Below are positions 23,201 through 64,000 of a DNA stretch of 64,000 nt, piece by piece; position 1 is the stretch's first letter; every line of letters starts with the position of its first letter. Source of the stretch: Sphaerodactylus townsendi. Its lineage: Eukaryota. The notes under the pieces were generated by a model. It worked only from the letters and a program-made list of their open reading frames with translations, did no database searches and was not told where the DNA came from. Location: assembly GCF_021028975.2 (NCBI RefSeq), contig NC_059437.1:31744001-31808000 (forward strand). Direction: 5' to 3'. Both the position numbers and the translations under genes were made by a program.

Positions 23201-26200
23201 GATGCCCGACACAACGGTAGCCACCAAGGGAGTCTTGGTGCGGCTGTGCACCCGGGACAGCCACGTAAAGAGGAGCCCATCTTCAGCCATGGAATATATG
23301 ACTCGCGGCATTGGGAACATGGAGCCGAGCAAACTGCATTGAGCAGGAAGAAAAGTGGTCAGTACCTGGGCATGAAAAGAGGCCTTGGACAGCCACTGTC
23401 ACTGCCAGGCTCTGCCTTCCACCCAGACCTTACCTTGCGCTGAGGGCGCAGAGTGAGCCAATGGCCACGACATAACGGGCAGGCTCCCACCCCACATCCT
23501 TGAAAGCCTCAGGCAGGGGGCTCTCCTTGTTCACCAGGAAGTAGGGTACCATCAGGGTCAAGGCAGCAGAAACCCCAAAGTAGGCCACAAAGCAGATGAG
23601 AAGGGAGACAATGATGCTGATGGGGATGGAGCGCTGGGGGTTGCGAGCCTCCTCACCTGAGGATGGGGATGAGAGTCCAATGAAATCAGCCCGCTCTTAC
23701 AGTGCCCAAGACAGGAAGTGACTGGAAAATCCCCAATTCAAAAACCAGCTAATTTGAGCAGGAAATGCAGATTTTCTTTCAAACGTGAGAACATGTAGTA
23801 CAGAATTTGTTAATAGTTGTTATTATTATACACTGTCAATCTATTACCTGGGCACGTGACTGTCACCGTGCATGAGCACTGTTCTGTGCAAAGGAGTCCT
23901 CAGAGCTCCCAAGCTAAGCAGCCATCTGTGTCATTGGGCTGCACGGCTAATGATTCATTTCCCAGACCACAGGGAGATGCTTTCTGAAAGGAGTGCAACA
24001 GGCACAGCACAGCAGCCCCCACACCCCTGGCTGAGCAGGGATCCCATGTGAACGTGCTTCTGTACACAGCCCCAGTGCCCAGTCACTCAGCATGAAATGC
24101 CCCCTCCAGGACTAAATACCAACCAAGTGTTCTGTGGAACAGGGGAGGAGGGTGAGGGCATGGAGCAAAGTTCTCCCTACTGTTCCGTTCTTCCTGCAAC
24201 TGTTTACCTGTGGTTGCGATGCAGTCAAATCCAACAAAGGCATAGAAACAAGTTGCAGCACCAGTGAGGACCCCCTTGAAACCAAAGGGGAAAAAGCCAC
24301 CTGACCCAAAATTGCCGGCCCTGAAAGAGAAAAGGAAGGAGGAAGAGAGGGAAGGCCTCCAGCTACACTCAGAGGACCCGAGCAAGCGACTGAGGGGGTT
24401 GTCTCCTCCACACAGGGAGTGGACATTAATACTTAAATGGCTGTTGGACAAGTATTTCCCTCCAGCTCTATTGCTTTTCCTTTCTCCACCAGTCTAATGC
24501 CCCATGCCTTTTTTTGCTTTGCAGCATTTTAAGAAAACTTGGTGGAAAGATCTGTGTTGCCCAGAACAGTCAGATGCAGGAGGAGGAGGAAGAAGGAGAA
24601 GAAGAGTTTGGATATATATTCCCCCTTTCTCTCCTATAGGAGACTTAAAGGGGCTTACAAACTCCTTTCCCTTCCCCCCTCACAGCAAACACCGTGTGAG
24701 GTAGGTGGGGCTGAGAGAGCTCAGAAGAACTGTGACTAGCCCAAGGTCACCCAGCTGGCGTGTGGGGGAGTGCACAGGCTAATCTGAATTCCCCAGATAA
24801 GCCTCCGCAGCTCAGGTGGCACAGCAGGGAATCAAACCCAGTTCCTCCAGATTAGAGTACACCTGCTCTTAACCACTACACCACTGCTGCTAATCCCCGG
24901 GGAGCTGAATGAGAGGAGACAACTCGGAACAGCAAACCAGGCAGTTGCCACCTCAGGACGAAGGCATCTTCTTACGTGATTCCAGTCTTCAGAGCTTCTT
25001 GCGACCGGTTCTGATAATACTCCTCAGTCACACTCCAGTTCTTGACATCGCCCTTCACAAAGCCAGAGATGATGACAAAGCTGAGGACCAGCAGGTTGAT
25101 TGCAGTGAAGATTTTGTTCACTAGCGCAGATTCACTCACACCAAATGCTAGCAAGCCTGGAAAGGGAGGAAGCAAGAGGATTGGGGGGAGAGGAGGTCAC
25201 AGGAATATACCGACTCCCCTAAACTCAGCAGTGCTGGAGTTCCAGCCTCCTTGAACATACCTGCCCTCTCCTCTAGAGAGCCTGACACCTAGTCCCAGAT
25301 GCCAAGGTTGGCTGGTTTACTTTTAGTACTACTTTCCCATGCCTTGAAGCTAGTCCAGGCACTGAATAACCATTTCGAGGGAAGTGTGGTTCAGTTTAAG
25401 CTCTACAGCTTGTGGGCTTTTGCAAGGGAGGGCAGCTTTGCCACCTTAGGATCATCCCACCTGTCAGCAGCAACACCAGGAAGAGGGCAAAGAAGTCAGG
25501 ATATTCAGCCAGCACGTTCTCCAAGTGCAGGGCAGTGCTGTTCCGGAAGAAGGTGGAGATGTGATTGCCAATGATGTTGTCAAAGGCAGAGCTCCAGGCA
25601 CGAGCAACACTTGCCGTACCTGGCAATCAAGAAAAGAACCCTTCTTTAATCCAAGAAAGCATCATAGACACCTTATCAACACTACCCAAGAAACATCAAC
25701 AGCAGAACTACAAAAGAGCCTCACAGCTATTTAAAAAAATCCCCAAAGCTGGATGGTTCATCCTAACGCATCAGCTTTGCACACATCCCTTCTTGATCGA
25801 CCTAAACCTCCACAGAGGAGCACTTCAGGGTAACTCAAGTAAAGAATCCTAGCCTTGGTCTCTGGAGAAAGGCCTGTTCCTACAGCCCTCCTCTATCATT
25901 GTTGGGGCTACCCAGATAGAGTCAAAGATAGATTCTGCACAGCCTTGTCTTGCCCAGCTCAGATGCCCGTGCTCTTCCACATTCTCCAGTTACAAAATCA
26001 GATTCCAGTTATGGAAATCAAAGGGGTTTTCCCAGGGAGCTTGGATATATCACATACTTCTGGGTCCTGAAAAAAACTGTTCCAAAGAGCAGCCTTAAGA
26101 GCCAGAAGATTGGGATGAATGACTTCAAAGGGGAACTCTGTATCTAACACTGAACAATACGCCTCAGAAGTGTTGGAACTGGCCTCACACAGAGAAGCTC

Positions 26201-27299
26201 TGCTTTGGAGAAGGGGACACTTCAAGGGACTATTTCAGGCCTGGAAAAGCTTTTGATTGTGTTCTGGAGCAACATGAACAAGAAGTTAATATATTCATCA
26301 ATTAAAATATTTATATTCTGCCTTTCCTCATGACTCAAAGCAGCTTGCAAATCATCATTAAAAATAGCACAATTTAAAACCAGCCATATATCACCCTCTA
26401 ATAACCCCCATCAGATGTGAGGAATCGTGACGAATAGCGATTAAGGGCCAGTGTAGTGTAGCAGTTACAATGTTGGACGAGGATCTAGAAGACCCAGGTT
26501 CAACTTCTGCTGGGTGGCCACGGGCCAGTTATACACTCTCAACCTATCTTACCTCACAGGGTTCTTGTGAGGATAAAATGGACAAGGGGAGAATGTTGTA
26601 GGTTGCTTTGGGACCCTATCAGGGAAAACACTGGGATACAAATCAAGCAAATTAACAGGGGATAAGTGTTCAAAATATCTGTGTGATATCTCTTATAGCA
26701 GTGTCTGGATTGTAGTGTTGTTTGGAGTTATAAATGAAAATCTAGTCTGGGATCTCCAATTATGAGAGGGTTAGCCTGCTGAGGAAAATGCAACAATTAT
26801 GTTTCTTCAGAACAAAACAGAAAGCAAGCTCTGGTTGTGTCAGGAACACATTCTGTTACCATGATCTTTAAAAAAAACCCCAGAGGTTCCTCCCTCCCCA
26901 CACTCATCCCAATGGCACATACCTATCACATACGATAGGATGAGGTTCCATCCTGTGGTAAAGGCCCAGATCTCCCCGACAGTCACAAAGCTGTAGAGAT
27001 AGGCCGAACCAGCCTTCGGAACCCTGGCTCCAAACTCTGCATAGCACAGCCCAGCAAGAATTGATGAGACAGCCGCAATGAAGAAGCAGAGCACAATGTA
27101 TATGTGTCAGCATCCTTCACGCCCAGCCCTGCCAAGCTTACATATAACATCCGTCCCCCAGGGTGCTACTCCGGCCTCCAAGTTCTACCAGTCCCACGGT
27201 GGAGAGGCAACGGGCAAAACGGGTCTCTTCTGAGCTCAGGTCCAGCACACGTCGCCGGATCAACTTTTTGCCAAAGTTTGTCATGGCTTTCTGCAGCAT
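20288..27299 (-). CDS. SLC7A3: Cationic amino acid transporter 3 (CAT-3); coding exons 27299-26923, 25619-25461, 25156-24976, 24320-24208, 23656-23434, 23333-23194, 23099-22997, 22826-22615, 22248-22082, 21033-20925, 20418-20288; exon 1 has a local frameshift/stop patch (probably assembly error)
   Basis: CAT motifs [140 protein letters not shown]; all introns GT-AG; exons 2-11 open and in phase; SNX12 neighbour favours SLC7A3 over SLC7A1/2. Confidence 0.92.
24578..24891 (-). mobile_element. Squam3-like SINE (antisense to +) with (CTT)n-type tail
   Basis: tRNA-like head (ggaatcaaacccagttcctccag...ttaaccactacacca) and gaa/gga repeat tail typical of squamate SINEs; older relatives at ~9080, 10490, 12010, 20490, 26446, 29205, 32556, 43310. 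Confidence 0.75.
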
Positions 27300-46964: not shown

Positions 46965-49900
46965 ATCTATGACATCCTGTTCAGGCAGACACTTGAGACT
47001 GAACCTGAGAACTTCTGCCCATAAGGCAGATGCTCTTCCACTGAGCCACGGATCCTGAACCCTGACATACTTCATCAGGCCACAGCCCTGTAAAAGCACA
47101 AGTTTCTTCCCTACAGTCTGAAGATAACTACAGATAATGACAGTCCTCCTCTTACTCCTCGGTTGGAGAGCTGAGCTGCTAGCCAGGCTAGTGTGTGAGC
47201 TTCCTAGCACCTTTGAAGCCTGATAGACTTATTCTAGAATCATACTCCTCTAACAGCTTATAATTGAAGTATTTTGTTTTTTTATCAGTTTGAGGCACTT
47301 CACCTTCCAGCTACCTGGGAGGGAAACTGAGCAGGTTTTGCAGTAACGCCAATCAATCCATCACGTGAGAATAGTTTTGGCTCCTGAGCTAGGAAAGTCT
47401 CTACTGACATTGTTCATTCTTGCCTTTGTGGTCCAAGATTACTTTGCTATTTGGCTGTTCTATTTGCAAATCTTGTCCATGATCACTGCAAACGTCATAT
47501 GTTCAGCGTCTACCCTACGGGCCTACATTTATTCTCTTCAATACATCGCCCTCTGCTGGATGCCTTCTACAGTCTATGACGCCATAAACTTTTAAACCTG
47601 TTTTGTGGCATTTGGATACACAGGCCTGGGTTTTGCTAAGAGCTAATTGTGTCTGTTGGAAGCCAGAGAATTGCCGGTCTAGGACAAGAGCTGGGTCAAA
47701 ATAAAGGGCTTTGGGAGTTTCCTCATTCCCTGCTAGAATTAGCCTGCCTGGAAAAAGACTTTGAGCTCTTCCGTAGGAAGGAGAGGAAACATGGGATAAA
47801 GTAAGAATGCAGATGGGATAAACTAAAGTTACTATTGCAGCAGTCTCCATAATTTTTGAGCCTGCAGATGTCTTTGTAATTCTGACACAGAATGGTGGGC
47901 ACAGCTACAAAATGGCTGCCATAGGAGACACAAACTGGCTGATGCAGGTTATCTTCAGTCACACAGTGAAGATCCTTGTGCTGTGGTAGCAGCTGCTGCA
48001 AAAGCAATTTTGGAAAAAAAAATCTGACCACCATGATATCTCCAATAGCCAGTCAGAGGTCTTGCTGGGCAAGAGATCCACCTGCTTTCTAAAGACAATT
48101 GATAGGTGCCAGAAAAGTGCTGGTGAGCATCATTACATCCATGGATACCACATTGGGAAGCTCATGTACTGTGGTACGAAGTAGGTAGCTTGAATTGAGA
48201 CAGGCAGTAACAGAGCTGGGAGGAACCCCAAGATCAACCATATCAGGGGCCAGAATTAATCTGGATCTTAGCTCACAAAGCATATATTCCATTTCATTTA
48301 ACTATGAATTCTCTCCCTTTCTCTAAATAGAGAATAGAAGCTGCTAAGGAGAAGAAGCATTACAGCATGCCCAAGCACTTTCATGTATGAAAATCTGATC
48401 CATTTGAAAAAGAAATTTCCTTCTTCCGCATCCAAACTTCCCATCAGGCCCGAAAAGCACAGCAAATGCTTTGGAGTTAAAGTGCTATCATGAGAAAGAC
48501 AGCTGCAAATTCAGGGAAAGGGCTGTCAGGACTCAACTATAGCTTTTCAGTGCCTCCTGCTGGCACCTTCTGATTCTCTCTCTCTTCTATAAGAATTGCT
48601 GGGTCTGTATTCCTTCATAAAATAATTATTTGGATCTGAGTTTATATCCCCTGAGGATCACACTATACCACAACAACTAAGTAGGCCATATAGACCAACA
48701 AAGTTCCTGCCACAATAGTGCGGTTAATCTTTAAAGCACCTCATGACTCTAGTTTTTGCTGTAACAGATTAGCACAGCTAAATTATAGGAGTAATAGTTA
48801 AGCTACTTTTGTCTGAGATTGCATTTGCTTTTTCATAACGTCTGGCTACTTCTGAGCTAGGCCTTAGGCTCTTACTCAAATTGAAAGGGGCCATATTACA
48901 ACCAGTGAGTATATGACCCACATAGTAACTCTAGTGAATCTCTACCTCTTCCCTCATTTCTCTTGCTTTTAGTTGGTTCACAATTTCCCACAAGTGACAT
49001 AATAATGTCCACAGCTGCTGGCACAATCCTTCAACATTTGCCTGTCGCTCAGGTCCTCAGTTACTAAAGAGTAACTTGGAACAAGCAGTAACATGTCTTG
49101 GTTGTATTCACATTTGCTTCAAATAACTTTTGATCTGGAATGGCCTGCCTGATATGGTGAGGAAGGCTCCCATTTTCCGGGCATTCTGTGAACGATCACA
49201 CAAGTAACGGGGCTATACTATAAGAAAATGATTGGAATGATCCTTAGAAAAACAGAATGTGGACAGTACATACTGTGGTATAGTATATACTATTTGTTAC
49301 AGAAATTACACAGGTCACACATACATCATTTAACATGTTATGTGAAGCTTATGCTCTGTTTCATCTCTATTTTAGAATTCTGCATTCCTAATCCTACTGC
49401 ATTGCTTATTAGATGTCCCATCTTGTCCACTTTATGGTCTTACACTGTGCAATCTACCTTAAGTCTCAATGAGAAATACTGGCTACAAGCAATGTAAATT
49501 TGCATTTACAGGAGGGCTGTCTCTCTTTGCCATAAGGCAGCACCAACCACTTGCCTTTCTTTCTGTCCTTTCCTATTGGTTGGCAGAGTCTGGAATTCAG
49601 TCAGCTGCCAGAAGCTAAGAGACACTGGTGATTACACACTAATATATTCCTGAGACCTTGTAACTTTGCATCAGATTTGAATTTGTGTAAGCTATTTTTG
49701 GTCTCTGCAATTGAGCAGTCTAAAAATTCCAACTAAAAACACACAACACCACTTCTTAGATCACACCCCTGCAGTGTAATGCAGGTCATGGGCAACCTCC
49801 CCGTGCCCCAATTATTTGTGGTCTGACTTCCACTCACTCCAGTCAAAGGCTTCTTGTCATCCCTTAAGTGCCAAAGCTTTGTCTGTAGAGAGAAAAATCC

Positions 49901-50395
49901 CAAAGTGACAGAAAACCAACCAGAAAAATCACAACTCCCTGGGCTGAGATAAGGATCCTTCTTTATTCACTTTACCAGCCATCTTATTTCAGGCTACAGC
50001 AAAAGTTACAAAACCCACTTTATTTAGGAATTTTTTAAAAAAGAATAAAATAAAGGATTCAAGACAGAGAAAAACTAGGGAACTAAAGTTACTACTCAGG
50101 AAAAGCAAGAAGAGCAAAGAACCAATCAAATTCCACAGACAATTGTGTCTTCTGTCATAATCCAGCTCAGACAGAGATTCTGACAACATCTGGATTCCTT
50201 GGTTCCGTGTTAACCAGGGCGAGAAGCCCTAAAGGGCAGATAGAGCAGCATATTGCCAAGAATGTTGTCAAACCATCATCTTGTTTCCACGTGAGTCCAG
50301 GGATAGTTCTGCCATCATGAATGGCCCACCCCCATTGGTCCTGGAACAATCCGGTCTTCCTCTTCTCCCACTCTTACCCTCAATCCAAGAAGCTG

Positions 50396-53300
50396 CTAGT
50401 AGATGACTGTCTGCTGATTTGTCTTCTGCATCTGAATAATCTTGCCAAAGCCTCCTCTTCCCACATCATAATCTCTACGATATTCATCGTGCATCTACAG
50501 AGGAAGGAAAATGAGATAAATACTTACAGCAACCAAGACATGGGAACTTATCCAGAACTATCTAAGTTGGTCCCTATCAGGATGATAACCTGGAACGTTT
50601 AATGCTGAATTTGTCAGAGTTCAAAGACGCTGCTTTAGAATCACGATTCCAAACAACCTGGAGGAAAGTGTCCTGTTCTTTTAATAGAGGTTTAATGTGT
50701 GGCATGAACAGTTGAAGCTTCTCGTGGCGTACAGGTAACTAGGAAGGAACATCCCATTAATTTTCTATTAAAGTGATAGAACATTTTTCTCCAGGCTCTT
50801 CACAAGCCTATGTAGAAGTCAAGTCTCTCCTCTGTAAATTCCGCAGAGGACAAGGTTAGCTCTTTGGCCTGGAAGAACTAGGACTAACAGGTAGGCAATT
50901 TCACACTCTTGCCTCTGGTGCAGTTTCCAACCCAGGTATTAATTTTGAAAACCTATTTTTGATAACAAGCCTACTTACTGAGCATATTGTACTAGCTATA
51001 CATTTACTCACATATTTGGTCATTGACCGTAAATGAAGTATTACATTCTACATTTACTCACAGCCTGAGAACTTGGGGGAAGGCACACATCCAGACAAAA
51101 ATCAAAACCAACCTAGCCTAACATCTGCCAGACTCCTCAAAATTCCCTAAGATCTGCAAGCATCCCACAAACTTTGTTACTCACCTGGCCACCTGTCTTC
51201 CCACGGCCAAATTGCCGTCCTTCTTGGAACCCAGCATCCCAGTCTGTTTTAATGACGCGGTCATCCAACCGGGTTCCATTGATAAACCGCATACAATGCT
51301 CAGCTTCTGCTCTAGTGTAGTATCTAAATTGTTACTATAAGGAAAGACTAATGGGACCATTTAAAGAGCTGGTTCTGGCTTCCCCCAAGCTAAAGAAAAA
51401 ACAGCCAGAGATCTCCAAAGTTCCCATTTCCCTAATCAAAAGTAAATTGGTTTATAACTTATTATCATAATCCAGAGAATTCTAAGTGTAATACAGTGCT
51501 GTTTCACTACTAAAGCTAAGGAAGTTTACCAGTCTAGTTAGTAAGAAACAACTTCAGAGCTCCGCCCATCACCAATTTTGCAGGAGGGATGCAGGTAGAA
51601 TACATAGATTCAAGTTAAATACATCTTTACTTCAATATGGTACATGACAATTCAGTCTCACCTACAATTTGAAGTGTTACAGCCCAGTCACAAAAATGCA
51701 GGCCTACCAATCACGTAGTTAGGTTATTACACAACAAAAGCACCGAAAGACCAGACCTTGCGCCCACAAAGGAAACGGAATTTTAGGTGTTTCAAACTGC
51801 TTCAAAACTTCAAATAGGCACAGAACATAGCATCCTTCCTCAGTGCCTTTTATAAATGGGAGGCACTATTCTGTGATTATTCTGATCTTACCTTGAGGAT
51901 AGGCTACAGTGTGTTGCTAGGAGACTGCTGCTCTGCTCCCTGGCCTACAGGGTTCCCTAGGATTCCATCTTTCCTCCCATGTTGTTCAACACTCATATAA
52001 AGCCTAGTGGAAGAGATTTTTCAGAGATTTGGGATGAGTTACCACCAATATGCAGAAGAAAATTCCAGCGCTCGCTACCAGCATATCTCAAGGAGGCAGA
52101 TTTGGAACGGATTATGGCTAACAAGCTGAAACACTATCACAACAAAATGGAGGTGCTACTGGCTGGGGGAGGGAAATGGGTTATCTTTATAGTGCAGGGA
52201 TCTGCAACCTGTGGCTCTCCAAATGTTCATGGACTACAATTCCCATCAGCCCCAATTGGCCATGCTGGCAGGGGCTGATGGGAATTGTAGTCCATGAACA
52301 TCTGGAGAGCCGCAGGTTGCAGACCCCTGTTATAGTGGATGGGGTTGAAGTCCCCTTAAATAAACATACCCTGAAGAAGCTTCTGGATCCAGGTCTCCAG
52401 CTGAATAAACAGATGGAAGTGGTGGTCAGGGGTATCTTTCAGCCAAAGAGCCTTTTGCAGCCCTTCCAGTACAGTGTAACAGCTAGATTACTGCTATGCA
52501 CTCTACACGATTCATATCATAGTTCTTTCTAATACTATGTATTGTTGTAAAAGCTGAACAATGCAGAAAGCAGACAGGAACAAAGTAGATTCCTTTGAAA
52601 TGTGGTGTGAAAAAGAGTTTAAAGGATACTGGGGGCTGCCAAGATGACACACAAGTGGATTCTCGATCAAATCAAGCCTGAACTGACCCTAAAATGACTA
52701 AGCTGAGGCTATGAGCACATTATGAGAAGACCGGACTCACTGGAAAAGGCAATGATGCTAGGAAAAGTCAAAGGCAACAATAAAACATGCAGATCCAACA
52801 TGAGATGGATAGATCCATGAAGGAAACATTGGCCCTCAGTTTGCAACACCTGAGCAACACAGGTAACAGTAGGACACTTCAAAGGACACTGGTTCATAGG
52901 GTTGCTGCTGTAACTTGGAAGTGACTTGACGACACTTAACATACACACACGACATGGGATCAACACACTTAAAGACTGCCATTTCCCATATGAACCTACC
53001 GTTCATCCTCAAAAGCTCTGTTTTGTTGCTGCCATCTGAGGAAAGATGGGTGGCAACCCAAGAAAGGGCCTTCTCCTCTATGGCACCAAAAAATTTCAAT
53101 TCCATCCCCAAGAGGAATCATGTGTGTCTCTGTATTGGTGTCTTTCACATGCAGGTAAATACTTTTTTTTTGTTTCATCTTCCAAACCCCAATAATGTTT
53201 CTGACCCCCTTTCTAGTGCTGTTTGTTTATGTGTTTTTAAGTAAATTAGAAACTCTTAACTATGTCCTAATCGTTTAAATGATTTTATGTTCACCACTTT

Positions 53301-54865
53301 GTTAACCCTGATTGGATAAAAAGGCAGCTAAAAAGTTTTAAATAAAAATAATATTAAACAATAATTAAATCAAAAGGCAAAGGATACTCCACAAAGCAGA
53401 AACCACAAGGGGTTTTCTTCACCTTGTCGAGCCCCATGATGATGCGCTTGACATCCCCACACTTAGAAAAGAGCTCATGGATTTGCTCCTCTGTGGTGTA
53501 GAAGGACAAATTGCCCACATAAAGTGTGCTAGAAGTCTTCAGAGCATTCTCCTGCTCTTCTCTGTTCTGGGATACAGATGGGGGTGTGGGGAGAGACAGC
53601 ATCACATATATTCCATTTCTACGATAATTTACCATGCAAAGCATTATTCACTGTAGAAGAAGCAGAAATAACTTGGCTAGGTATACCAAGGCAACCCAAG
53701 TAACATAAAAGTGGAGGAAAAGGCGAGCGTTAGCCAACAACACTCAGATTTGGAATAACGTCTTCCATGGATCTAACATTTAAGAGGTGAAGTATAAAAC
53801 AATGTAATTAATTAATAACTTGCCTCATTAGTAAGGAAAGATGTGCCACTCATCCCAAATTAAATGCCCTGGCAAAAATCTTAACTGCCTAGTCACTCAG
53901 AAATTTAAAATAATAATTATCCACTAATACCAGCTCTTAAAATAAACTGGCATATATGAATTTTTGGTATTTCCCACCCCAGCAAGACCTGTAATGTGGC
54001 AATTGGTTCTAGTATTATTTTGCCATATTAATTATATTGTATCTCTCCTACATAGAGATGCCATCACATCCATCCAAGAGACAATCAATCATATTAACAT
54101 GGGTCAGAGTGGCCTTTTTTTTTTTGTTTCTTTGTGCCATCAAGTGACAACAGACTTACAGCAACCCCATAGAAATTACTACCTATATTTTCCATGTCAC
54201 AAAAGCAGTACATTATCCCTCAAGAGGAAGCTTTATGCCTCCCAAACGTTTAATTTTCCTATGCTCAAGATCAACAAAGTTGCTTGGATTTGCAGCTCAC
54301 TCTGCCCATATGCACAGAGGCAATTGGGCAAAGTGGGCAGTTGGGCAGTCCCATTGGGCAAAGTGGGCAGTTGCCCAGGGCGCCCCTTGTGGGGGGCGCA
54401 AAAACTGCAGGTTCGTTTGTGGGATTTTTTGTATTTTCACTGTTTTCACCATTTTTGGCCTGCAGGGGGCGCAGTTTTTAGGCTAGCAGCACCAAAATTT
54501 CAGGGGTTTTTTGGAAGACTCTCCTAATGATATCACCCAGGTTTGGTGAGGTTTGGTTTAGGGACTCCAATGTTATGGACTCCCAAAGGGAGTGCCCCAT
54601 CCCCCATTGTTTCCAATGGGAGCTAATAGGAGATGGGTTCTACACCTTTGAGGGTCCATAACTGAACCAAACTTCACCAAACCTGGGTGGTATCATCAGT
54701 AGGGTCTCACGAAGATACTCTAAAAATTTTGTGCTGCTATCTTAATAATTGCACCCCTGACAGCAGGCACCCCCTAAATTGCCCCAGATTTTCCTTTTAA
54801 ATCCACCCCCTTCCTGCCAATGCTTGTTTTCTTTCTTTCTTTTATTCTCTCAATGCCTAATAAAG

Positions 54866-54927
<62 letters not shown>

Positions 54928-57381
54928 ATCCACCCCCTTCGGCATGGATTTAAAGGGAGAATCTGAGTTTAAACATTGAAAGTGATGCTGTTTCAGGGTG
55001 GGGTATAATCCACCCCAAAACAGCATCACTTTCAAAGTTGTTTAAACTGGGAACCCCAGATTATCCCTTTAAATTGGATTTAAAAGGAGAATCTGGGCTC
55101 CCTAGTTTAAACATAATTGAAACTGATGCTGTTTGGGGGTGGATTCCAGCATTACTTGTTTAAACTAGGGAGCCCAGATTCTCCTTTTAAATCCACCTTA
55201 AAGGGAGAATCTGGGATCCCCAGTTTAAATAACATTGAAAGTGATGTTGTTTCCCCCAATTGCGGGGACTGGATACAACACCATAAAACGTTTTCATAGC
55301 AGTAATGAAACATTTCGAAAGCATTTTGAAAATGTTTTCAAAAAAATATTTCTGCTGTGTGGCATGGCCCATTGCTGTGTTCAAATTTGTGAGTTGGGGC
55401 ATGTTCTATAATGTGATGGTGACTTTGAAATGACCTGGTGGAAAAAAATCATTGTTTGGTCATGATGGGAGAGGGTGGCCACCCATGGGGGGGCATCAAA
55501 CTCAGGTTTTGCCCAGGGCTCCAGTTTGCCTAGGTATGCCACTGCATATACAGCAACATTTATACCATTTTAGACACAATCTGCACAAGCTACGCAAAGC
55601 CTCTGCATGTCACAAAACCCCACCTCATCTCTTTTCTCTCAGTCTACACAGATTGTCCCTCCTCTCTAGCAATGTCGGCTTCCATTGGTTTGTTACTTAT
55701 TTAGAAAATGTCTTTGACGCCTCTACAAAGAACTTGTTCAAGCACCTTTCCTACATTTCCAGCTTCAAACACAGGATGCCCTGTTTGCAGAGCTCCACTT
55801 CTGAGAAACTGGCATAAACACAAGGCTGAGGGCCTTCTATCCCCTACAGTCACTCTCTACATGGGCTGACGACTCTGGGCTAGGAAATTCCTGGAGATTT
55901 GGAGGTAGATACTGGGAAGTGTTGGGGGGGGGGGGTTGGGGGGGTTGCACCTCAGCAGATAAAAAGAGCTACACAGTCCCTTCTCCAAACCAGCCATTTT
56001 CTCCAGAGAAACGGATTCCTGTAGGTAGTTTCTGCATGGTCCAAATATCCAGGGTTGAGCAAGGGAAATATCCCTTTGGCCAAGAGGTTTGCAGAGTTCC
56101 CATTCTTGAAGCAGGTTTGTCCCGCAATATTTCTCTCATCCCGGGATTTTCAAAAATCGCTACTATGCAAACATCACGGGAGCAGAACCAGTTTATATTT
56201 CCCACCTAGGCGCCTGATCCTCCCACCCCTCCACCCATCCCCAATCTCCCCACCTGGCATCATGTCAGTTTTCAACACTGCTGAGTCGTCGACCATTGGA
56301 GCCCACCATTCCCGGAAAGTTCCCCAGACAGAATTCTGCTCATTTTATCAACTGGGTGCCATTTCACCTGGGTTAATCAGGAGTGGAGTCCAAAAATGTC
56401 CCCATTTTCTTTTCTGTAGGTGTACTGGCTGCTCAGAGTGCATAGCTAGGGAGATGTGTACTTTGGGCTGAATGTTAGTGGGCATATCTCCGTGGGGGGT
56501 GGGGGAGAGGGAGTCTCTTGTTTTCCACAAAAATATGAGACTGAGTGGGAATGTGACGTGATGCTGTGCCTCATTATTTTTTGCTGCCATGTGTTGAGGC
56601 CTGCACTGGGCTCTATCCGGAAGTGGAAAAAGGGGGAGCTTTGTTTCCCCCTGCTGCTGCCCCAAAACAACAGCCAATCAGAACTTGGGACACCGGGAAT
56701 GTTTGCGCATGCACAAATACACTTGCGATGTAAGTACAAAAGACCCAGGCTTGTGCAAAACAAAGTGGAGTATTTACTCCTGGTCTTCACTCAGTTCCTT
56801 CACAGAAATGGGCAGCAATGCAGAGGGAGATACTGGGATAAAACAGACCCTGATTGTAAAATACCAACTGTAACTCAGAATAACTGTGCCGCACAGAAAC
56901 AGCCTTAGTCTAGAATAGATGACAGCTGCAATTCTGGCAGGTCTTTGGGCTCTACCTGAAGATTAATAATAAAAAAGCATGAATATGACCAATGGTATTA
57001 ATATACCAATAACTCTAATATTCAATATGCAAAACATAATCTCACACTGGCTCATTACAAAGAAACATTAAGCAAATGTTTCCTGAAGGTTGGCAGCACG
57101 GTCTCTACAAAGAACCGAAGGATTTAAAAAACAGAACCGAAAGCGAGGACGTCTCTGAACATGTGCAAAGTGCCTTTCCGCTTAAAGAGAAATGGAATAA
57201 GCCCTTTGAGCACTAACAAAACACCTCCCCTTCCCAGGAGTTTCGGCAGGACCTCCTTAGAGTGAATCCCCTACATAGCTTCTCCCTTTCCTACCTGAAA
57301 CTTCTGGTCCCGGTACAGGGTCAAGTTGCAGTGCGAGTCACTGTCAAGCACTCCTAGCGTCGTGCTCAGGATGCCCGACAT
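50396..57381 (-). CDS. NCBP2L: Nuclear cap-binding protein subunit 2-like (CBP20), copy A, 167 aa; exons 57381-57295, 53566-53388, 51323-51185, 50494-50396
   Basis: [167 protein letters not shown]; RRM with NCBP2 exon structure, open frame. Family is certain; the NCBP2L vs NCBP2 symbol is inferred from the X-homologous neighbourhood. Confidence 0.9.
52195..52329. mobile_element. Palindromic hAT-type MITE with 8-bp TSD
   Basis: cagggatctgcaacc...ggttgcagacccctg; TSD ttatagtg on both sides. Confidence 0.9.
52545..52940 (+). mobile_element. RTE/BovB LINE 3' fragment (decayed)
   Basis: tttgaaatgtggtg...cacattatgagaagaccggactcactggaaaaggcaatgatgctaggaaaagt resembles the RTE ORF C-terminus (FEMWC...HIMRR.DSLEK.MMLGK). 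Confidence 0.7.
54315..55544. mobile_element. 1.23-kb non-autonomous hAT element, present only in copy A
   Basis: Imperfect TIR cagaggcaattgggcaaagtgg / ccagtttgcctaggtatgccactg; 8-bp TSD catatgca/catataca; the empty site catatgca is seen in copy B at ~63967. Confidence 0.85.
54867..54925. repeat. (ATT)n microsatellite
   Basis: About 19 consecutive tta/att units. Confidence 0.95.
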
Positions 57382-57399
57382 CTTGCCTTCCCAGCCCAC

Positions 57400-57700
57400 A
57401 AAAAATCTTCAAGCAGGCCTGCTCAGATAATTAGTTGCAGTAGCTGCCACTCACAATGTTCCTCTTGGTCGCCACGATGAATGCCATCACCCACTAGGCT
57501 CAAGAAGAGCCAATCAAAGCCCAGGGGCGGGTTGCCTTGTCGCAGGGGATGCTGGGGATTGTAGTTGTTGTTCTTCTATTCCTTGTCAGTTTGCCTAAGA
57601 CCGGCCTAAAGGGATGTGAAAGGGCGTCTGCGCATGGTGCCGTTTGGGCGGGAACGTTAGTTTCGGACAGGACATAGCATCAGAAAATAATTGAAAGCTT
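57400..57700 (-). promoter_or_regulatory. Promoter of NCBP2-like copy A
   Basis: CCAAT ~57510, GC box ggggcggg ~57524, ZNF143-like actacaatccccagcatcc (minus strand, ~57547-57565), CpG enrichment just upstream of ATG 57381. Confidence 0.6.
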
Positions 57701-60525
57701 TTGGAGTTGTTGGCTAAATGACAGAGATTTAAATAGTAATATAACAATGGCACATTGGGATCAGTTATGTAACGTTTAATCAATATAGTTTGGGGTAGAT
57801 GTCTTTTCTGTTTAATTCTTCTTTATCCTCTGGTATTTTTCTATCCTGTTAAAATATTTTTTTAAAAAACAGCTAGGATTGCTAGGTGTAAGGTGGTTAG
57901 ATCCAGGGTGGGAAACATGTGGAGGTTTGGGGAAGGAGCGTGGGGAGGACAGGAACGTCAGTGGGCTATAGTGCCCTGGAGTCCACCCTCCAAAGCATCC
58001 GTTTTCTCCAAGGATACTGGCTTCTGTCCTCTGCAGATGAGCTATAATCCCACCTGATCCATTTGAAGAAGAAATTCCCACTTGGAGGCTGGCGTCCGGA
58101 AAACCAGCTGTACCTTTTTTTAATTGAGGGAGGATGTGGAAGGTGGCAACGATTCAGGGCCACAGAACTAATAAGACCACCCCTGTGCATGTGATGAAGT
58201 GGACTATAGCTTACCTCAGGAAAGCATCCTTTTTCATAAACCTGCTGATTTTTAAGGTGCCACAGGAATTTCTGAGTTGGGCATGGTCCAACTAGGGTGT
58301 GATGGAATGTAGTATCCACATTTTGAGACACAACCTTTGCACATTCTGGTTTTCTCTCTTGCTACTGGAGCCATTTCCCCCCATGTTATAGTGAAGCTAG
58401 TCCACTATTGTCCCCTGGGCCTCAAGTAGTGAAGCAACAGCTTCTGCTTTTTCTATCTTTGAGAAGTTTGATTTCTGCTTAAGATGACTCCTTTTGTATT
58501 ATGGTGATTGAGGCCTGCTACAACTATAACAAGGAGACTGACAATTGTAATAACAACCTTTTATTGTTTTCCAACCTTACAGTTCCTATTGTCAGATATA
58601 CTTTAGGCTAGAATACATGTAATGTTAGGAGGTGACATGATGGTTCTAGGCAATTAATACATGACTGCAACAATAGCGGTCACAAAGCGGCAATTCAGAG
58701 GGAGAAGTTTTACATAAGCTTCTATTCTGGCTTTGAGGTACCATTCCAAATCATTCATCATTCTTCAGCGTGCTATGTTCAGATTAGAATAAGAGATTAG
58801 CTCTATTCAGAGTTTCTGCTGCACTGCCAGCTAGGCCAAGGGCAAGTGAACTCTTCTCTGCCAGAGTGAAAGAGGCAAAGGTGTTCTGACCAGATGAAAA
58901 GCTCCACTCAGCACAAGAAGATGAGCCTGCACTCCCATTCCCAAATGTTCCAACTGGTGGCATGTCCAGGGCTTTGGGTCTCTTTGGGGCACATGCAGTG
59001 CTAGAGTTCTCATATGCTACAAAAGACAGGATTGCAACAACACATCCCAAATGATTTGGCATAAGTTCCAAGGAAGCAGATTTCTAAACCAAGTGAATGT
59101 AGGAATAGCAGCCTGAGCTTGCATCCCATGCAAAGTTCTAATGTCACCCTGTCAATGGTGCTTCTTGTAACAACAGTAAGGTCATCAAGTTCCTGAGAGT
59201 TTTAGGGAAACATGGACAAGGCTGAGACAGATTCAGGGTTAGCTTGTTGGTATCTGCATGCTTCTCTGGAAAGGGTTGTTTTCCTGGGGCTGATCAGATC
59301 TGAAAGCAATTAGCCCCAGGACTGAGGGGCTCCTTAATTGCATTGAATCCAGAATGGAAGACTAACCAAATAGCAGAGATTCACAGGCATGCCACCATTG
59401 AGGTTGATATCCTTAGGCTGAGGCTCTTGCCATATTCTCCAGTTCTTGCCAAGTGGTTAACCTGTGCTGGCCCGCTATTCACAAGGTTGGTTCAAATACA
59501 CGCTACTCCTACCTGAGCAGGGCTATGGAAAACTTGCTTCTCCCAGAACTACAGGAACTGTCCTTCCCCTTATTCTGCAGTTGCCATAGCACTGCTCCGA
59601 AGAGGTCACTGTGCTTTGGAACAGCTCCACTGAATCAATAAATGGGAAAGACAAAACCCTACATCTGCCCCTCTCTCATCAGCAGAGAAGACAGGGAGAA
59701 AGAGGAAGGAAGGCAAGGCACCTTGTCCTGGTTCCACAAAGGAGCTTCATGCGACCCAGCCGAGTACTGCAACCCAGTTGAGTGCTGGGGCCAGGCACTC
59801 AGTTCCCACCACAGTGCCCCAACCCACTTTAATCTCATCGCTGACTCATCACTTCTTAGATCATGCCCCTGCAGTGTAATGCAGGTCATGGGCAACCTCC
59901 CCATGCTCCAATTATTCAGTTTATAAGCAAAATGTTCAGTCTGGCTGTGAATTGACTTCCACTCACTCCAGTCAAAGGCTTCTTGTCATCCCTTAAGTGC
60001 CAAAGCTTTGTCTGTAGAGAGAAAAACCCCAAAGTGACAGAAAACCAACCAGAAAAGTCACAACTCCTAGGGCTGAGATAAGGATCCTTCTTTATTCACT
60101 TTACCAGCCATCTTATTTCAGACTACAGCATGAGTTACAAAACCCACTTATTTTGGAATTTTTAAAAAAGAATAAAATAAAGGATTCGAGACAGAGAAAA
60201 ACTAGGGCACCAGAGTTACTACAAAGGTAAAGCAAGAAGAGCAAAGACCCAGTCAAATTCCATAGACCATGGTGTCTTCTGTCATAATCCAGCTCAGACA
60301 GAGATTCTGACAACATCGGGATTCCTTGGTTCCGTGTTAACCAGGGCGAGAAGCCCTAAAGGGCAGATAGAGCAGCATATTGCCAAGAATGTTGTCAAAC
60401 CATCATGTTGTTTCCACTTGAGTCCAGGGATAGTTCTGCCATCATGAATGGCCCACCCACATCAGTCCTGGAACAAACCTGTCTTCCTCTTCTCCCACTC
60501 TTGCCCTCAATCCAAGAAGATGCTA

Positions 60526-63230
60526 CTACATCACTGTCTGTTGATTCGGCTTCTGCATCTGAGCAATCTTACCAAAGCCACCTCTGCCCACATCATAGTC
60601 TGTCCGATATTCATCACGCACCTACAGAGGAAGGAAAATGAGACAAACACTTACAGACCAAGATATGGGAACTTATCCAGAACTATCCAAGTTTGGTGTC
60701 ATGACAGGTTTTTTTACCAAACCCAAACCACAGGTGTTTATAAGGATAACCTGGAATGTTTAGTGCTGAATTTGTCAGCTCAAACAACCTGGAGAAAAGT
60801 GTCCTTAAAAATGGAGGTTTAATGTGTGGCATGAGCAGTTGAAGCTTCTCATGGCATACAGGTAACGAGGAAGTAACATCCCATTAATTTTCTATTGAAG
60901 TGACAGAACATTTTTCTCCAGACTGTTGACAAGCCTACTTAGAAGTCAAGTCAAGTCAAGGTTAGCTCTTTGGCCTGGAAGAACTAGAACTAACAGGTAG
61001 GCAATTTCACACTCTTGCCTCTGGTGCAGTTTCCAACCCAGGTATTAATTTTGAAAACCCATTTTTGATAACAAGTCTACTTACTGAGCATATTTCACTA
61101 GATGTACATTTACTCACAGCCTGAGAACTTGGGGCATGGCACACATCCAGACAAAAGTCAAAACCAACCTAGCCTAACATCTGATAGACTCCTCAAACTT
61201 CCCTAAGATCTGCAAGCATCCCACAAACTTTGTTACTCACCTGGCCACCTGTCTTCCCACGACCAAACTGCCGTCCTTCTTTGAACCCAGCATCCCAGTC
61301 TGTCCGAATGATGCGGCCATCCAGCCGGGTTCCATTAATGTACCGCATACAATGCTCAGCTTCTGCTCTAGTGTAGTAACTGGGTTGTTACTATAAGGAA
61401 AGACTAATGGGACCATTTAAATAGCTGGTTCTGGCTTCCCCCAAGCTAAAGAAAACACAGCCAGAGATCCCCAAAGTTCCCATCTCCTTCTGACCCTCTT
61501 TCCAGTCAGCCTGACATGAATTCCAGGGAAGATTCTGGAGCAGATCATTAAACAGACGATCTGCCAGCACTTAAAAGGGAACACTGTGATCACAAAAAGT
61601 TAGCATGGGTTTCTGAAAAACAAGTCATGCCAGACTAATCTTATCTCTTTTTTTGAAAGAGTGACAAGCTTGGTAGATGAAGGGAATGCTGTGGACATAG
61701 CATACCTTGATTTTAGTAAAGCTTTTGACAAGGTTCTCCATAACATTCTCGCAAGTAAGCTAGTGAAATGTGGACTAGAAAATGCTACTGTTAGATGGAT
61801 TTGTAATTGGTTGATTGATCGAACTCAAAGGGTGCTCATTGACGGCTCATCTTCATCCAGGAAAGAAGTGACAAGTGGGGTGCCACAGGGTTCTGTCTTG
61901 GGCCCAGTGCTATTCAATATTTTTATCAATGACTTGGATGATGGAATAGAAGGCATGCTAATCAAATTTGCAGATGACACCAAAATAGGAGGAGTAGCTA
62001 ATACCCCAGAGTCAGAATTCAAAATGACCTGGACAGATTAGAGAGCAGGGCCAAAACAAACAAAATGAACTTCAACAGAGATAAATGTAAGATACTACAC
62101 TTAAGCAGAAAAAATGAAATGCACAGATACAAGATGGGTGACACCTGGCTCAACACTACATGCGAAAGGGATCTGGGAGGTCCTAGTAGACCACAAACTG
62201 AACACGAGTCAGCAGTATGATGCGGCAGCCAAGAAAGCCAATGGTTCTGGGCTGTATCAATAGGAGTATAGTGTCAAGATCGAGGGATGTAATTGTACCA
62301 CTCTATTCTACATTGGTTAGACCTCACCTGCAATATTGTGTGCAGTTCTGGGCACCGCAATTCAGGAAGGATATTGACAAACTGGAATGGGTGCAGAGGA
62401 GGGCAACCAAAATGGTGAAAAGTCTGGAATTCATGCCCTACGAGGAGAGACTTAGGAACTGGGGATGTTTAGTTTGGTGAAGAGAAGGTGAAGAGGTAAC
62501 ATGATAGCTATGTTTACATATTTGAAAGGATGTCATGTTAGTGAGGGAGCAAGCTTGTTTTCTGCTGCTCCAGAGACTAGGACCAGGAGTAATGGGTTCA
62601 AGGTGAAGGAAAAGAGATTCCACCTAAACAACAGGAAAAACCCCGACAGTAAGGGCTGTTTGACAGTGGACTGCACTTCCTAGGAGTGTGGTGGAGTCTC
62701 CTTTGAGTTTTTTAAAACAGAGGCTGGATGGTCATGAGCCTACTGGGGAGGGTGATCTAAAAATATAATAAATAAATACATACATCTGTCAGAAGTGCTT
62801 TGACTGTGTGTTCCTGCATTGCAGGGGTTGGACTTGATGGCCCTTGGGGTCTCTCCCAACTCTATGATTATAGTGCTATTTGTTTATGTGTTTCTAAGTA
62901 AATTAGATACTCTTAGTATGTCCTAATTGTTTAAATGATTTTATGTTCACCACTTTGTTAACCCTGATTGGATGAAAAGGCAGCTAAAAAGTTTTAAATA
63001 AAAATAATATTAAACAATAACATAATTAAATCAAAAGGCAAAGGATACTCCACAAAGCAGAAACCACAGGGGGTTTTCTTCACATTGTCAAGCCCCATGA
63101 TGATGCGCTTGACATCCCCACACTTAGAAAAAAGCTCATGGATTTGCTCCTCTGTGGTGTGGAAGGACAAATTGCCCACATAAAGTGTGCTAGAAGTCTT
63201 CAGAGCCTTCTCCTGGATTTTGTTGGTGCC
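60526..63230 (-). CDS. NCBP2L: Nuclear cap-binding protein subunit 2-like (CBP20), copy B, 5'-partial (exon 1 beyond window); exons 63230-63049, 61379-61241, 60621-60526
   Basis: [138 protein letters not shown]; open frame and intact splice sites. Symbol inferred as for copy A. Confidence 0.88.
61380..63048 (-). other. U12-type intron of NCBP2-like copy B
   Basis: GTATCCTTT donor; TTTCCTTAT branch-like motif shortly before CCCAG. Confidence 0.9.
61505..62870 (+). mobile_element. 5'-truncated CR1 LINE (decayed RT fragment), present only in copy B
   Basis: [57 protein letters not shown] motifs with frameshifts; CR1-like 3' end ...cccaactctatgatt. Confidence 0.95.
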
Positions 63231-64000
63231 CTAGGATATAGTTGGGGGTGGGAGGAGAGACAGCATCATATAAATTCCATTTCTACCATCATTTACAATC
63301 TAAAGCATTATTCACTATAGAAGAGGCTATGTATACCAAGGCAACCCAAGTAACATGAAAGTGGAGGAAAAGGCGAGCATTAGCCAACAACACTCAGATT
63401 TGGAATGATATCTTCCATGGATCTAGACCATTCAAGTCCTGGGGTATAAAACAATTAAAGTTAATTAATAAGGAACTTGCCTTATTAGTAAGGAAAGATG
63501 TGCCCCTCATCCCAAATTAAATGCCCTGGCAAAAATCTTAACTGCCTAGTCACTCAGAAATTTAAAATAATTATTATTCACTAATACCAGCTCCTAAAAT
63601 AAACTAGCACATATGAATTTTTAATATTTCCCACCCAGCAACACCTGTAATGTGGCAATTGGTTCTAGTATTATTTTGCCATATTATTAATGGTATCGTA
63701 TCTCTCCTACATAGAGATGCCATCACATCCATCCAAAAGATAATCAAATTAACATGGCTTTTTTTTTGTTTTGTTTTGTTTCTTTGGGCCATCACGTGAC
63801 AGCTGACTTACGGCAACCAGGTAGAGTTTACGAATTTCCCATGTCACAAAGGCAGCAATACATTATCCCTCAAGGGAGCTCAAGAGAAAGATTTATGCCT
63901 CCCAAACTTTTAATTTTCCTTTGCTCAAGATCAACAAAGTTGCTTGGATTTACAGCTCACGCTGCCCATATGCAGCAACATTTATACCATTTTAGCCACA

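What the first reader, a model, noticed from the sequence alone, without database searches (positions are those of the whole stretch)
50396..63230. Tandem CBP20 (NCBP2-like) paralogs with complementary substitutions at functional residues
Seen: two open, spliceable CBP20-like genes in a tandem duplication. Human CBP20 numbering is recalled. Copy A keeps the stacking tyrosines Y20/Y43 and D114/W115/D116 but has R112K, V134M and R135H (VIKTDWD, QMHDEY); R112 and the Q133-R135 segment are cap-contacting in CBC crystal structures. Copy B keeps R112/V134/R135 but has Y50H, E87D and D108G; I recall Y50 lining the CBP20-CBP80 groove that binds the ARS2/NELF-E C-termini. Both copies have an extended C-terminal tail. 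Inference: alternative nuclear cap-binding complexes with altered cap affinity (A) or effector recruitment (B), in addition to a canonical NCBP2 presumed to lie elsewhere.
Basis: partly seen in the sequence, partly recalled or inferred. Interest (0 to 1): 0.8.

Follow-up and report, generated by a model that had tools for sequence, protein, structure and literature searches.

The report
Tandem CBP20 gene pair in gecko
A dwarf gecko has two intact side-by-side copies of the gene for the small subunit of the nuclear mRNA cap-binding complex; one copy has changed residues in the cap pocket and the other near the partner-protein groove, and they look like duplicates of the lizard's only such gene, not extras beside a standard one.

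Summary
The window is Sphaerodactylus townsendi chromosome CM037626.2. On its minus strand lie two four-exon CBP20 genes with open frames and GT-AG introns throughout. Exon 1 of copy B lies just past the window end. Both are already annotated as 167-aa genes, and copy B is RefSeq "NCBP2" (XP_048370119.1).

The substitutions are as stated. Copy A has R112K, V134M and R135H. Copy B has Y50H, E87D and D108G, and also K75N. Four outgroups show that all are derived and copy-specific.

Both copies remain under purifying selection (branch omega about 0.32 and 0.37, both below neutral), at a higher rate than non-gecko lineages.

Two parts of the interpretation fail:
- The long C-terminal tail is a trait of the whole "type-2" CBP20 paralogue found in lungfish, amphibians, turtles, birds and squamates.
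- A canonical NCBP2 elsewhere is not supported. The pair sits at the conserved TEX11 / SLC7A-permease locus of that paralogue. No squamate human-type NCBP2 turned up in three searches.

Copy B keeps a CpG-rich promoter and copy A's is eroded. I read B as the working CBP20 and A as a retained paralogue with a retuned cap pocket.

This gene is also tandemly duplicated in Eublepharis and Rhineura. One Rhineura copy carries R112E and R135Q. Expression could not be tested.

The parts
57295..57381 (-). Copy A exon 1, coding part: ATG, 29 codons, includes the Y20 equivalent, Y14H and G8V; donor GT
53388..53566 (-). Copy A exon 2: 59 codons plus 2 nt; start of the RRM; Y43 and Y50 kept; K34N; one codon shorter than B at its 5' end
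   Evidence: RRM_1 E 2.4e-11
51185..51323 (-). Copy A exon 3: 1 nt plus 46 codons; R112K (AAA), I110V, K120Q; D114, W115 and D116 kept
50396..50494 (-). Copy A exon 4 with stop: V134M (ATG), R135H (CAC), T140R; ends ...QQTVIY*
63049..63230 (-). Copy B exon 2: 60 codons plus 2 nt; Y50H (CAC), K75N (AAT)
   Evidence: matches P0049
61241..61379 (-). Copy B exon 3: its first nt T makes the split codon GAT (E87D); F100Y, D108G (GGC); R112 kept
60526..60621 (-). Copy B exon 4 with stop: V134 and R135 kept; I153A, T158P, I164M; the final Y codon is now a stop
49747..51431 (.). Copy A 3' half of the duplicated segment; partner 59847-61487, 83.4% identity
59847..61487 (.). Copy B 3' half of the duplicated segment
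53211..54314 (.). Copy A exon 2 and intron 1 part of the duplicated segment; partner 62868-63974, 86.9% identity
62868..63974 (.). Copy B exon 2 and intron 1 part of the duplicated segment
57029..57674 (-). Copy A promoter and exon 1 block, 83.4% identical to the copy B promoter (L001:9693-10343, outside the window). CpG o/e is 0.57 in A against 0.82 in B

Best explanation
The locus holds two functional tandem duplicates of the squamate type-2 CBP20 gene. This is the TEX11-adjacent paralogue of NCBP2, and apparently the only CBP20 type that squamates have. The duplication arose in the Sphaerodactylus lineage tens of millions of years ago (inferred). Copy B lies next to TEX11, keeps every cap-pocket residue and has a CpG-rich promoter. 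It most likely supplies the ordinary CBP20 subunit of the nuclear cap-binding complex, although its ARS2/NELF-E arginine-binding site is altered (Y50H, E87D, D108G). Copy A is kept by selection but has lost part of its promoter CpG island. It has replaced R112, V134 and R135 in or beside the m7G and phosphate pocket. It most likely still pairs with CBP80 and forms a cap-binding complex with lower or altered cap affinity, probably with narrower expression. Shown here: gene structure, intactness, derived state of the substitutions, selective constraint, synteny and promoter composition. Inferred: which copy is housekeeping, CBP80 pairing, the biochemical effect of the substitutions, and expression.
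For: All seven in-window exons, and copy B's exon 1 just outside the window, have open frames, and every intron is GT-AG. Both are annotated as 167-aa genes, and B is XP_048370119.1 NCBP2. A against B gives dS 0.252, dN 0.071 and omega 0.28. Polarised with four outgroups, A has 13 N and 11 S changes and B has 11 N and 8 S. Both ratios are below neutral (p 0.0065 and 0.034). A neutral sequence would keep its ORF, ATG and splice dinucleotides in only 3-8% of simulations, with substitutions only. R112, R135, Y50, K75, E87 and D108 are near-invariant in 224 relatives. The literature says R112 and D114 coordinate N1 and O6 of m7G, and that V134, R123, R127 and Q133 bind sugar and phosphate (bioRxiv 2024.05.04.591051). 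R112 and Y43 are called key for m7G, and R112 binds PHAX E150 (PMC12350170). [quoted passage not shown] Promoter CpG o/e is 0.82 in B, close to single-copy Hemicordylus at 0.83, and 0.57 in A. The TEX11-adjacent position is shared with Hemicordylus, Eublepharis, Rhineura and the turtle type-2 gene. SLC7A-type permease exons lie on the other side.
Against: The counts are small. Omega near 0.3 averages the whole time since duplication and cannot exclude recent loss of constraint on A. R112K is conservative, T. brucei CBP20 binds caps with T at this site, and Gekko has V134I, so A's pocket may work almost normally. The cap contact of R135 is recalled, not read here. B also carries changes at near-invariant sites (Y50H, K75N), so calling it the ordinary copy is a relative judgement. 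A further CBP20 gene elsewhere in this genome could not be excluded directly.
Confidence: 0.55

Rival explanations
1. Copy A is a redundant duplicate sliding towards loss. With B covering the essential function, constraint on A's cap pocket and promoter has relaxed. R112K, V134M, R135H and the CpG erosion are early decay, not a new function.
For: Three of A's changes in the conserved core hit the best-conserved pocket residues. Both arginine codons are CpG-containing CGN in the outgroups, so they are mutation-prone. The promoter CpG o/e has fallen to 0.57. In Rhineura, a copy 99.2% identical to its twin carries R112E and R135Q, which looks like fresh loss of cap binding in a redundant copy. 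Elgaria has a visibly decaying extra copy, P0195.
Against: A's N:S ratio is below neutral (p 0.0065). Its ORF, ATG and all splice sites are intact after about 0.1 substitutions per silent site, which a neutral sequence achieves in only 3-8% of simulations before indels are counted. Its single indel is in frame. A and B have evolved at about the same protein rate (13 against 11 changes).
Confidence: 0.27
2. One reading: both copies are specialised alternative CBP20 subunits. A has altered cap affinity and B has altered effector recruitment. Both work beside a canonical NCBP2 encoded elsewhere.
For: The substitution pattern is real. In A it clusters at the cap pocket. In B it clusters at the proximal ARS2/NELF-E site: Y50, E87 next to Y89, and D108 next to D107 (PMC5670239). 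Birds, turtles and salamanders do carry a human-type NCBP2 as well as the type-2 gene.
Against: No squamate human-type NCBP2 appeared among the ranked hits of a turtle type-1 query, nor among members of four large type-1 clusters, nor in the NCBP2L query. In Podarcis and Lacerta both annotated genes, NCBP2 and NCBP2-like, are type 2. RefSeq names copy B itself NCBP2. The locus is the ancestral one, not an extra insertion.
Confidence: 0.1
3. The two copies are kept for dosage or for divided expression only, and the amino-acid differences have no functional effect.
For: R112K, E87D, V134M, and Y50H (aromatic kept; F occurs in 14 of 223 relatives) are fairly mild. Tandem duplicates of this gene recur in squamates without such changes, as in Eublepharis, the lacertids and Rhineura c2/c4.
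Against: R135H, D108G and K75N are not mild, and they hit sites that hardly vary in 224 relatives. Omega is 2-6 times the non-gecko background.
Confidence: 0.08

Closest known systems
NCBP2 / CBP20, the small subunit of the nuclear cap-binding complex (human structures 1H2T, 1N52, 5OO6)
   Same: Same fold and length class. There is an RRM_1 domain with N- and C-terminal extensions. Copy B matches human CBP20 along almost its whole length (E 9e-77, residues 5-156), as do copy A's exons. The stacking tyrosines and the D114-W115-D116 motif are kept in both. The three introns lie at the same places in all type-2 loci compared.
   Different: The genes are not at the locus of the human-type gene. 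They belong to a separate sarcopterygian clade, called type 2 here (SH-aLRT 85-90, quick trees). Type-2 markers include KCGDVKR, KKTPCGF and a tail ending in QMQK.NQQ..IY. Copy A lacks R112, V134 and R135. Copy B lacks Y50, K75, E87 and D108.
Type-2 CBP20 paralogue of sauropsids, amphibians and lungfish (for example Hemicordylus XP_053130267.1, Chrysemys XP_005286082.1)
   Same: Same clade, same TEX11-adjacent position, same exon structure and same C-terminal tail.
   Different: Here the gene is duplicated in tandem, and both copies are on long branches. Copy B's terminal branch is 0.20, against 0.017 for Hemicordylus. The substitutions at near-invariant sites are absent from the other type-2 proteins aligned. 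The one exception found is Rhineura P0202 (R112E, R135Q); other Rhineura copies (c2/c4) were checked only over exons 3-4.
Mammalian NCBP2L (X-linked NCBP2-like)
   Same: A second CBP20-type gene on a chromosome that also carries TEX11 in mammals; the human NCBP2L cluster sits on a 156,040,895-bp contig, which I recognise (from memory) as the length of the X chromosome. It has a somewhat extended C-terminus.
   Different: Its place in the tree is unresolved because of a long stem of 0.5. Its best non-NCBP2L matches are mammalian NCBP2 (78%) rather than type 2 (72-75%). From memory it does not lie beside TEX11 in human. Orthology with type 2 is therefore open.
Tandem type-2 CBP20 copies in Eublepharis macularius and Rhineura floridana
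   Same: Same locus and orientation, with two or more copies. Rhineura copy c1 changes the same two arginines (R112E, R135Q).
   Different: Within-species copies resemble each other more than they resemble copies in other genera: 82% and 79% against about 71-74% over whole genes. The duplications are therefore independent or homogenised. The Rhineura repeat is 99.2% identical and could be an uncollapsed haplotype.

Membership tests
CBP20 / NCBP2 family | Single RRM with CBP20-specific N- and C-terminal extensions, and near full-length similarity to solved CBP20 | tested here: met
   Pfam RRM_1 matches A exon 2 (2.4e-11), B exon 2 (5.7e-11) and P0049 (4.4e-17). PDB CBP20 is the best hit for all A exons tested and for B.
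CBP20 / NCBP2 family | m7G stacking tyrosines Y20 and Y43 | tested here: met
   Both are present in A and in B.
CBP20 / NCBP2 family | Guanine-specific contacts R112, D114, W115 and D116 | tested here: inconclusive
   Copy B has all four. Copy A has K112 with D114, W115 and D116 kept. T. brucei CBP20 binds caps with T and S at 112 and 114 (bioRxiv 2024.05.04.591051), so K112 does not by itself exclude cap binding.
CBP20 / NCBP2 family | Sugar and phosphate contacts R123, R127, Q133, V134 (and R135, Y138 from recall) | tested here: inconclusive
   Copy B has all of them. Copy A has M134 and H135, with the others kept. The role of R135 was not confirmed in a source read here.
CBP20 / NCBP2 family | Obligate heterodimer with CBP80 and synergistic cap binding | not testable with these tools
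   No complex modelling or assay was available. Interface residues were not checked one by one.
Canonical (human-type, type 1) NCBP2 orthologue | Groups with human, chicken and turtle NCBP2 in a tree and carries the type-1 sequence markers | tested here: not met
   Copy B falls in the type-2 clade with lungfish, caecilian, salamander, turtle, bird and squamate proteins. Copy A shares the type-2 markers exon by exon.
Type-2 CBP20 paralogue | Head-to-head neighbour of TEX11 (Pfam SPO22) and the shared tail ending in QQT.IY | tested here: met
   TEX11 lies upstream of B. The same arrangement is seen in Hemicordylus, Eublepharis, Mauremys and Rhineura.
Mammalian NCBP2L | Orthology shown by a clade with mammalian NCBP2L proteins | tested here: inconclusive
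   NCBP2L forms its own long-stemmed clade whose attachment is unresolved.
Expressed functional gene (either copy) | Spliced transcripts | not tested
Only the annotation models exist.

The most novel reading that the evidence does not exclude
Squamates lost the human-type NCBP2 and rely on the TEX11-adjacent type-2 CBP20 gene, which has since been duplicated in tandem again and again. In at least two independent lineages one duplicate has replaced the same two cap-pocket arginines: R112K/R135H in Sphaerodactylus copy A and R112E/R135Q in Rhineura c1. This would be convergent evolution of a second cap-binding complex with altered cap or PHAX coupling, not mere decay.
Probability: 0.2. Interest if true: 0.7.

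Novelty: new variant of a known kind. Interest (0 to 1): 0.45.

Why it matters
CBP20 is among the most conserved RNA-processing proteins, and its cap pocket hardly varies across eukaryotes. A vertebrate that has kept a paralogue with three pocket changes for tens of millions of years gives a natural test of how much cap affinity the complex needs. That holds all the more if the lineage has no human-type NCBP2. It also tests whether cap binding and effector recruitment through ARS2, NELF-E and PHAX can be tuned separately. The wider pattern seen here suggests the vertebrate cap-binding complex is less uniform than assumed. That pattern consists of an old type-2 paralogue, its probable sole survival in squamates, recurrent tandem duplication, and repeated hits on R112 and R135. 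If copy A proves silent or decaying, the finding is an ordinary duplicate pair that is already annotated.

Tried and rejected
2. Source papers for R112 and R135. Mazza et al. 2002 was not held under the two ids I tried, and I found no held paper that describes R135.
3. Published squamate loss of NCBP2. The squamate gene-loss paper PMC13005343 mentions none of NCBP2, SENP5, PIGZ, DLG1 or TEX11, and no supplements are held.
4. The turtle type-1 locus. P0090 is not on record in the gene index, so type-1 synteny was not seen.
5. Pfam on ten long ORFs in window 1-50000 gave nothing. The permease exons were found by hydropathy ranking instead.
6. The careful tree did not finish in 300 s, so only quick trees are reported.
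7. Hypotheses considered and rejected:
- The pair as an assembly haplotig. Rejected, because 82-87% identity is far too low.
- A third copy in the window. Rejected, because tblastn found none.
- A gekkotan-wide shared duplication with simple orthology. Rejected, because within-species copies are the closer ones. Concerted evolution cannot be excluded.
8. Copy A's exons were never joined for a search, fold or look-up. Its protein was studied exon by exon, and no structure prediction was made for it.
Full report
**What is there.** The window is a piece of Sphaerodactylus townsendi chromosome CM037626.2 (GCA_021028975.2). Locus L001, fetched through protein P0049, matches window 64000-50526 at 100% identity. 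A self-comparison shows two duplicated blocks. The first is 49747-51431 against 59847-61487 at 83.4%. The second is 53211-54314 against 62868-63974 at 86.9%. A third block joins copy A's promoter and exon 1 (57029-57674) to copy B's promoter just beyond the window, at 83.4%.

Each unit carries a four-exon CBP20 gene on the minus strand:
- Copy A: 57381-57295, 53566-53388, 51323-51185 and 50494-50396.
- Copy B: exon 1 outside the window at L001:10001-10087, then 63230-63049, 61379-61241 and 60621-60526.

Every intron is GT-AG and every frame is open. The public annotation already lists both as 167-residue RRM_1 genes. Copy B is RefSeq XP_048370119.1, named "nuclear cap-binding protein subunit 2". 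tblastn found no third copy in the window.

**The residues.** Alignments to human CBP20 chains show that P0049 numbering is human plus 3.
- Copy A keeps Y20, Y43, D114, W115 and D116. It has K112 (AAA), M134 (ATG) and H135 (CAC).
- Copy B keeps R112, V134 and R135. It has H50, D87 and G108. D87 comes from the split codon GA|T.

It also missed Y14H, K34N and K120Q in A.

**Derived or inherited.** I extracted the orthologous exons from Gekko kuhli, Eublepharis macularius, Hemicordylus capensis and the turtle Mauremys mutica. At every one of the listed sites, three or all four outgroups carry the usual residue; the exception is V134, where Gekko has I (ATT). Each change is therefore specific to one copy.

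In an alignment of 224 relatives these sites are near-invariant once mis-modelled fragments are set aside. The long C-terminal tail is different. It is present in all type-2 proteins, from lungfish to birds.

**Selection.** I used Nei-Gojobori counts summed exon by exon, leaving out the split codon. A against B gives dS 0.252, dN 0.071 and omega 0.28. The background is 0.05-0.09 among Hemicordylus, Eublepharis and turtle, and 0.15-0.19 in comparisons involving Gekko.

Polarised by the outgroups, A has 13 nonsynonymous and 11 synonymous changes (omega about 0.32). B has 11 and 8 (about 0.37). Both ratios lie below the neutral expectation (binomial p 0.0065 and 0.034). Both exceed the Hemicordylus-turtle background (Fisher p about 0.005), but not the Eublepharis-Gekko one.

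In simulations with substitutions only, a neutral sequence kept its ORF, ATG and splice dinucleotides 3-8% of the time. Both copies have therefore been under purifying selection for much of their history, at a relaxed level. dS differs among exons, from 0.09 in exon 2 to 0.80 in exon 4. This hints at past gene conversion.

**Age and origin.** Whole-gene DNA identity is 82% between A and B. It is 79% between the two Eublepharis copies, and about 71-74% between genera. The duplications are thus lineage-specific or homogenised. The Sphaerodactylus duplication is roughly half as deep as the split between gecko families. I take that to mean tens of millions of years, which is an inference and not a dated estimate.

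**Which gene is this.** Upstream of B, head to head, lies a SPO22-domain gene, which is TEX11. The same arrangement holds in Hemicordylus, Eublepharis, Rhineura and the turtle type-2 gene. On the other side of copy A, at 20905-27106 on the minus strand, are exons of a cationic amino-acid transporter (AA_permease_C, E 1.5e-19).

Quick trees place copy B and all squamate proteins in a clade with lungfish, caecilian, salamander, turtle and bird proteins. I call this clade type 2 (SH-aLRT 85-90). It is separate from the tetrapod clade that holds human, chicken and turtle NCBP2, which I call type 1. Birds, turtles and Ambystoma have both types.

No squamate type-1 protein appeared in any of three places:
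- the ranked hits of a turtle type-1 query, where squamate type-2 proteins do appear lower down;
- the listed members of four large type-1 clusters;
- the NCBP2L query.

In Podarcis and Lacerta both annotated genes, "NCBP2" and "NCBP2-like", are type 2. I conclude with moderate confidence that squamates lack type 1. A and B are then duplicates of the lizard's only CBP20 gene. This is indirect evidence. The relation of type 2 to mammalian X-linked NCBP2L is unresolved.

**Functional reading.** The literature read here gives the following:
- R112 and D114 coordinate N1 and O6 of m7G. R123, R127, Q133 and V134 hold the sugar and phosphates. T. brucei CBP20 has T and S in place of R112 and D114 and still binds the cap (bioRxiv 2024.05.04.591051).
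- R112 and Y43 are called key for m7G, and R112 also binds PHAX E150 in the snRNA export complex (PMC12350170).
[quoted passage not shown] Y50 stacks on ARS2 I856, and D107 makes a salt bridge to ARS2 R854. Y50A combined with three CBP80 mutations lowers ARS2 affinity twelvefold without harming cap or PHAX binding (PMC5670239, bioRxiv 2023.07.25.550453).

Copy A's changes thus cluster at the cap pocket. Copy B's changes cluster at the proximal effector site: Y50, E87 two residues from Y89, and D108 beside D107. The cap contact of R135 rests on my recall of the 2002 structures, which I could not read.

ARS2 binding is cap-dependent in that work. The two defects therefore cannot simply complement each other in trans. 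That argues against plain subfunctionalisation of the protein.

**Promoters.** The 800 bases around the ATG have CpG o/e 0.82 in B. That is almost the value in single-copy Hemicordylus (0.83). In A it is 0.57. I read this as B keeping a housekeeping-type CpG island and A having lost much of it. This suggests narrower or lower expression of A, but it is an inference.

**Verdict.** The best reading (0.55) is that B is the working CBP20 with a modified effector site. A is a selectively retained paralogue with a retuned, probably weaker, cap pocket. The main rival (0.27) is that A is a redundant copy in early decay.

**Wider pattern.** The same gene is tandemly duplicated in Eublepharis, with two copies about 16 kb apart. 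In Rhineura there are at least four copies. Rhineura copies c1 and c3 lie in a 32-kb repeat that is 99.2% identical. Their coding sequences differ by four bases, all nonsynonymous: L5P, R112E (CGA to GAA) and R135Q (CGA to CAA). The same two arginines are hit as in Sphaerodactylus copy A. Both are CpG codons, which explains part of this. The repeat could also be an uncollapsed haplotype. Even so, the coincidence is the most interesting lead to come out of this work.

**Limits.** Copy A's exons were not joined for any search, fold or look-up, so copy A has no full-length search or structure model. No human contig was fetched or used.

Noticed in passing
L006:10001-15096 and L008:10001-15111 (Rhineura floridana CM057620.1): There are at least four tandem type-2 CBP20 genes. 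A two-gene unit of about 32 kb is repeated at 99.2% identity. Copies c1 (P0202) and c3 (P0226) differ by four coding bases, all nonsynonymous: L5P, R112E (CGA to GAA) and R135Q (CGA to CAA). These are the same two arginines changed in Sphaerodactylus copy A. The repeat might be an uncollapsed haplotype.
   Followed up: partly
L003:10001-14240 and L007:10001-13801 (Eublepharis macularius CM053289.1): A tandem pair of type-2 CBP20 genes lies about 16 kb apart. The TEX11-adjacent copy (P0028) has a rewritten stretch right after the Y20 equivalent (YWEPRLK instead of YRDQRFR). The distal copy (P0241) has G103K and T113I.
   Followed up: partly
protein sets: No squamate protein of the human/chicken type of NCBP2 was seen, whereas birds, turtles and Ambystoma have both types. 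Lacerta agilis and Podarcis muralis each have two type-2 genes on different chromosomes. This suggests that the canonical NCBP2 was lost in squamates.
   Followed up: partly
window 58784-59071 (-): The submitter's model of copy B (P0121, 229 aa) leaves exon 4 after ...GRGGF and continues into this ORF downstream. It is either an alternative 3' exon or a mis-model.
   Followed up: no
window 61661-62480 (+): Reverse-transcriptase ORFs of a CR1-like LINE lie inside intron 2 of copy B. They are absent from copy A and are part of why the two units differ in length.
   Followed up: no
window 20905-27106 (-): Exons of a cationic amino-acid transporter are present (AA_permease_C, E 1.5e-19; AA_permease_2). 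This fits SLC7A3 lying next to the CBP20 pair, opposite TEX11.
   Followed up: partly
window 50396-63230, exon by exon: Synonymous divergence between A and B is very uneven: 0.09 in exon 2, about 0.24 in exons 1 and 3, and 0.80 in exon 4. This suggests past gene conversion of the 5' part.
   Followed up: no
L004 (Gekko kuhli CM122953.1): The Gekko type-2 gene has V134I. Within 10 kb its called neighbours are an IFT20 gene and an unnamed 349-aa gene rather than TEX11. The submitter's model is truncated to 130 aa, although exons 3 and 4 are present.
   Followed up: no
window 54850-54930: A long ATT/ATA-type microsatellite reads as poly-isoleucine or poly-tyrosine ORFs, in intron 1 of copy A.
   Followed up: no
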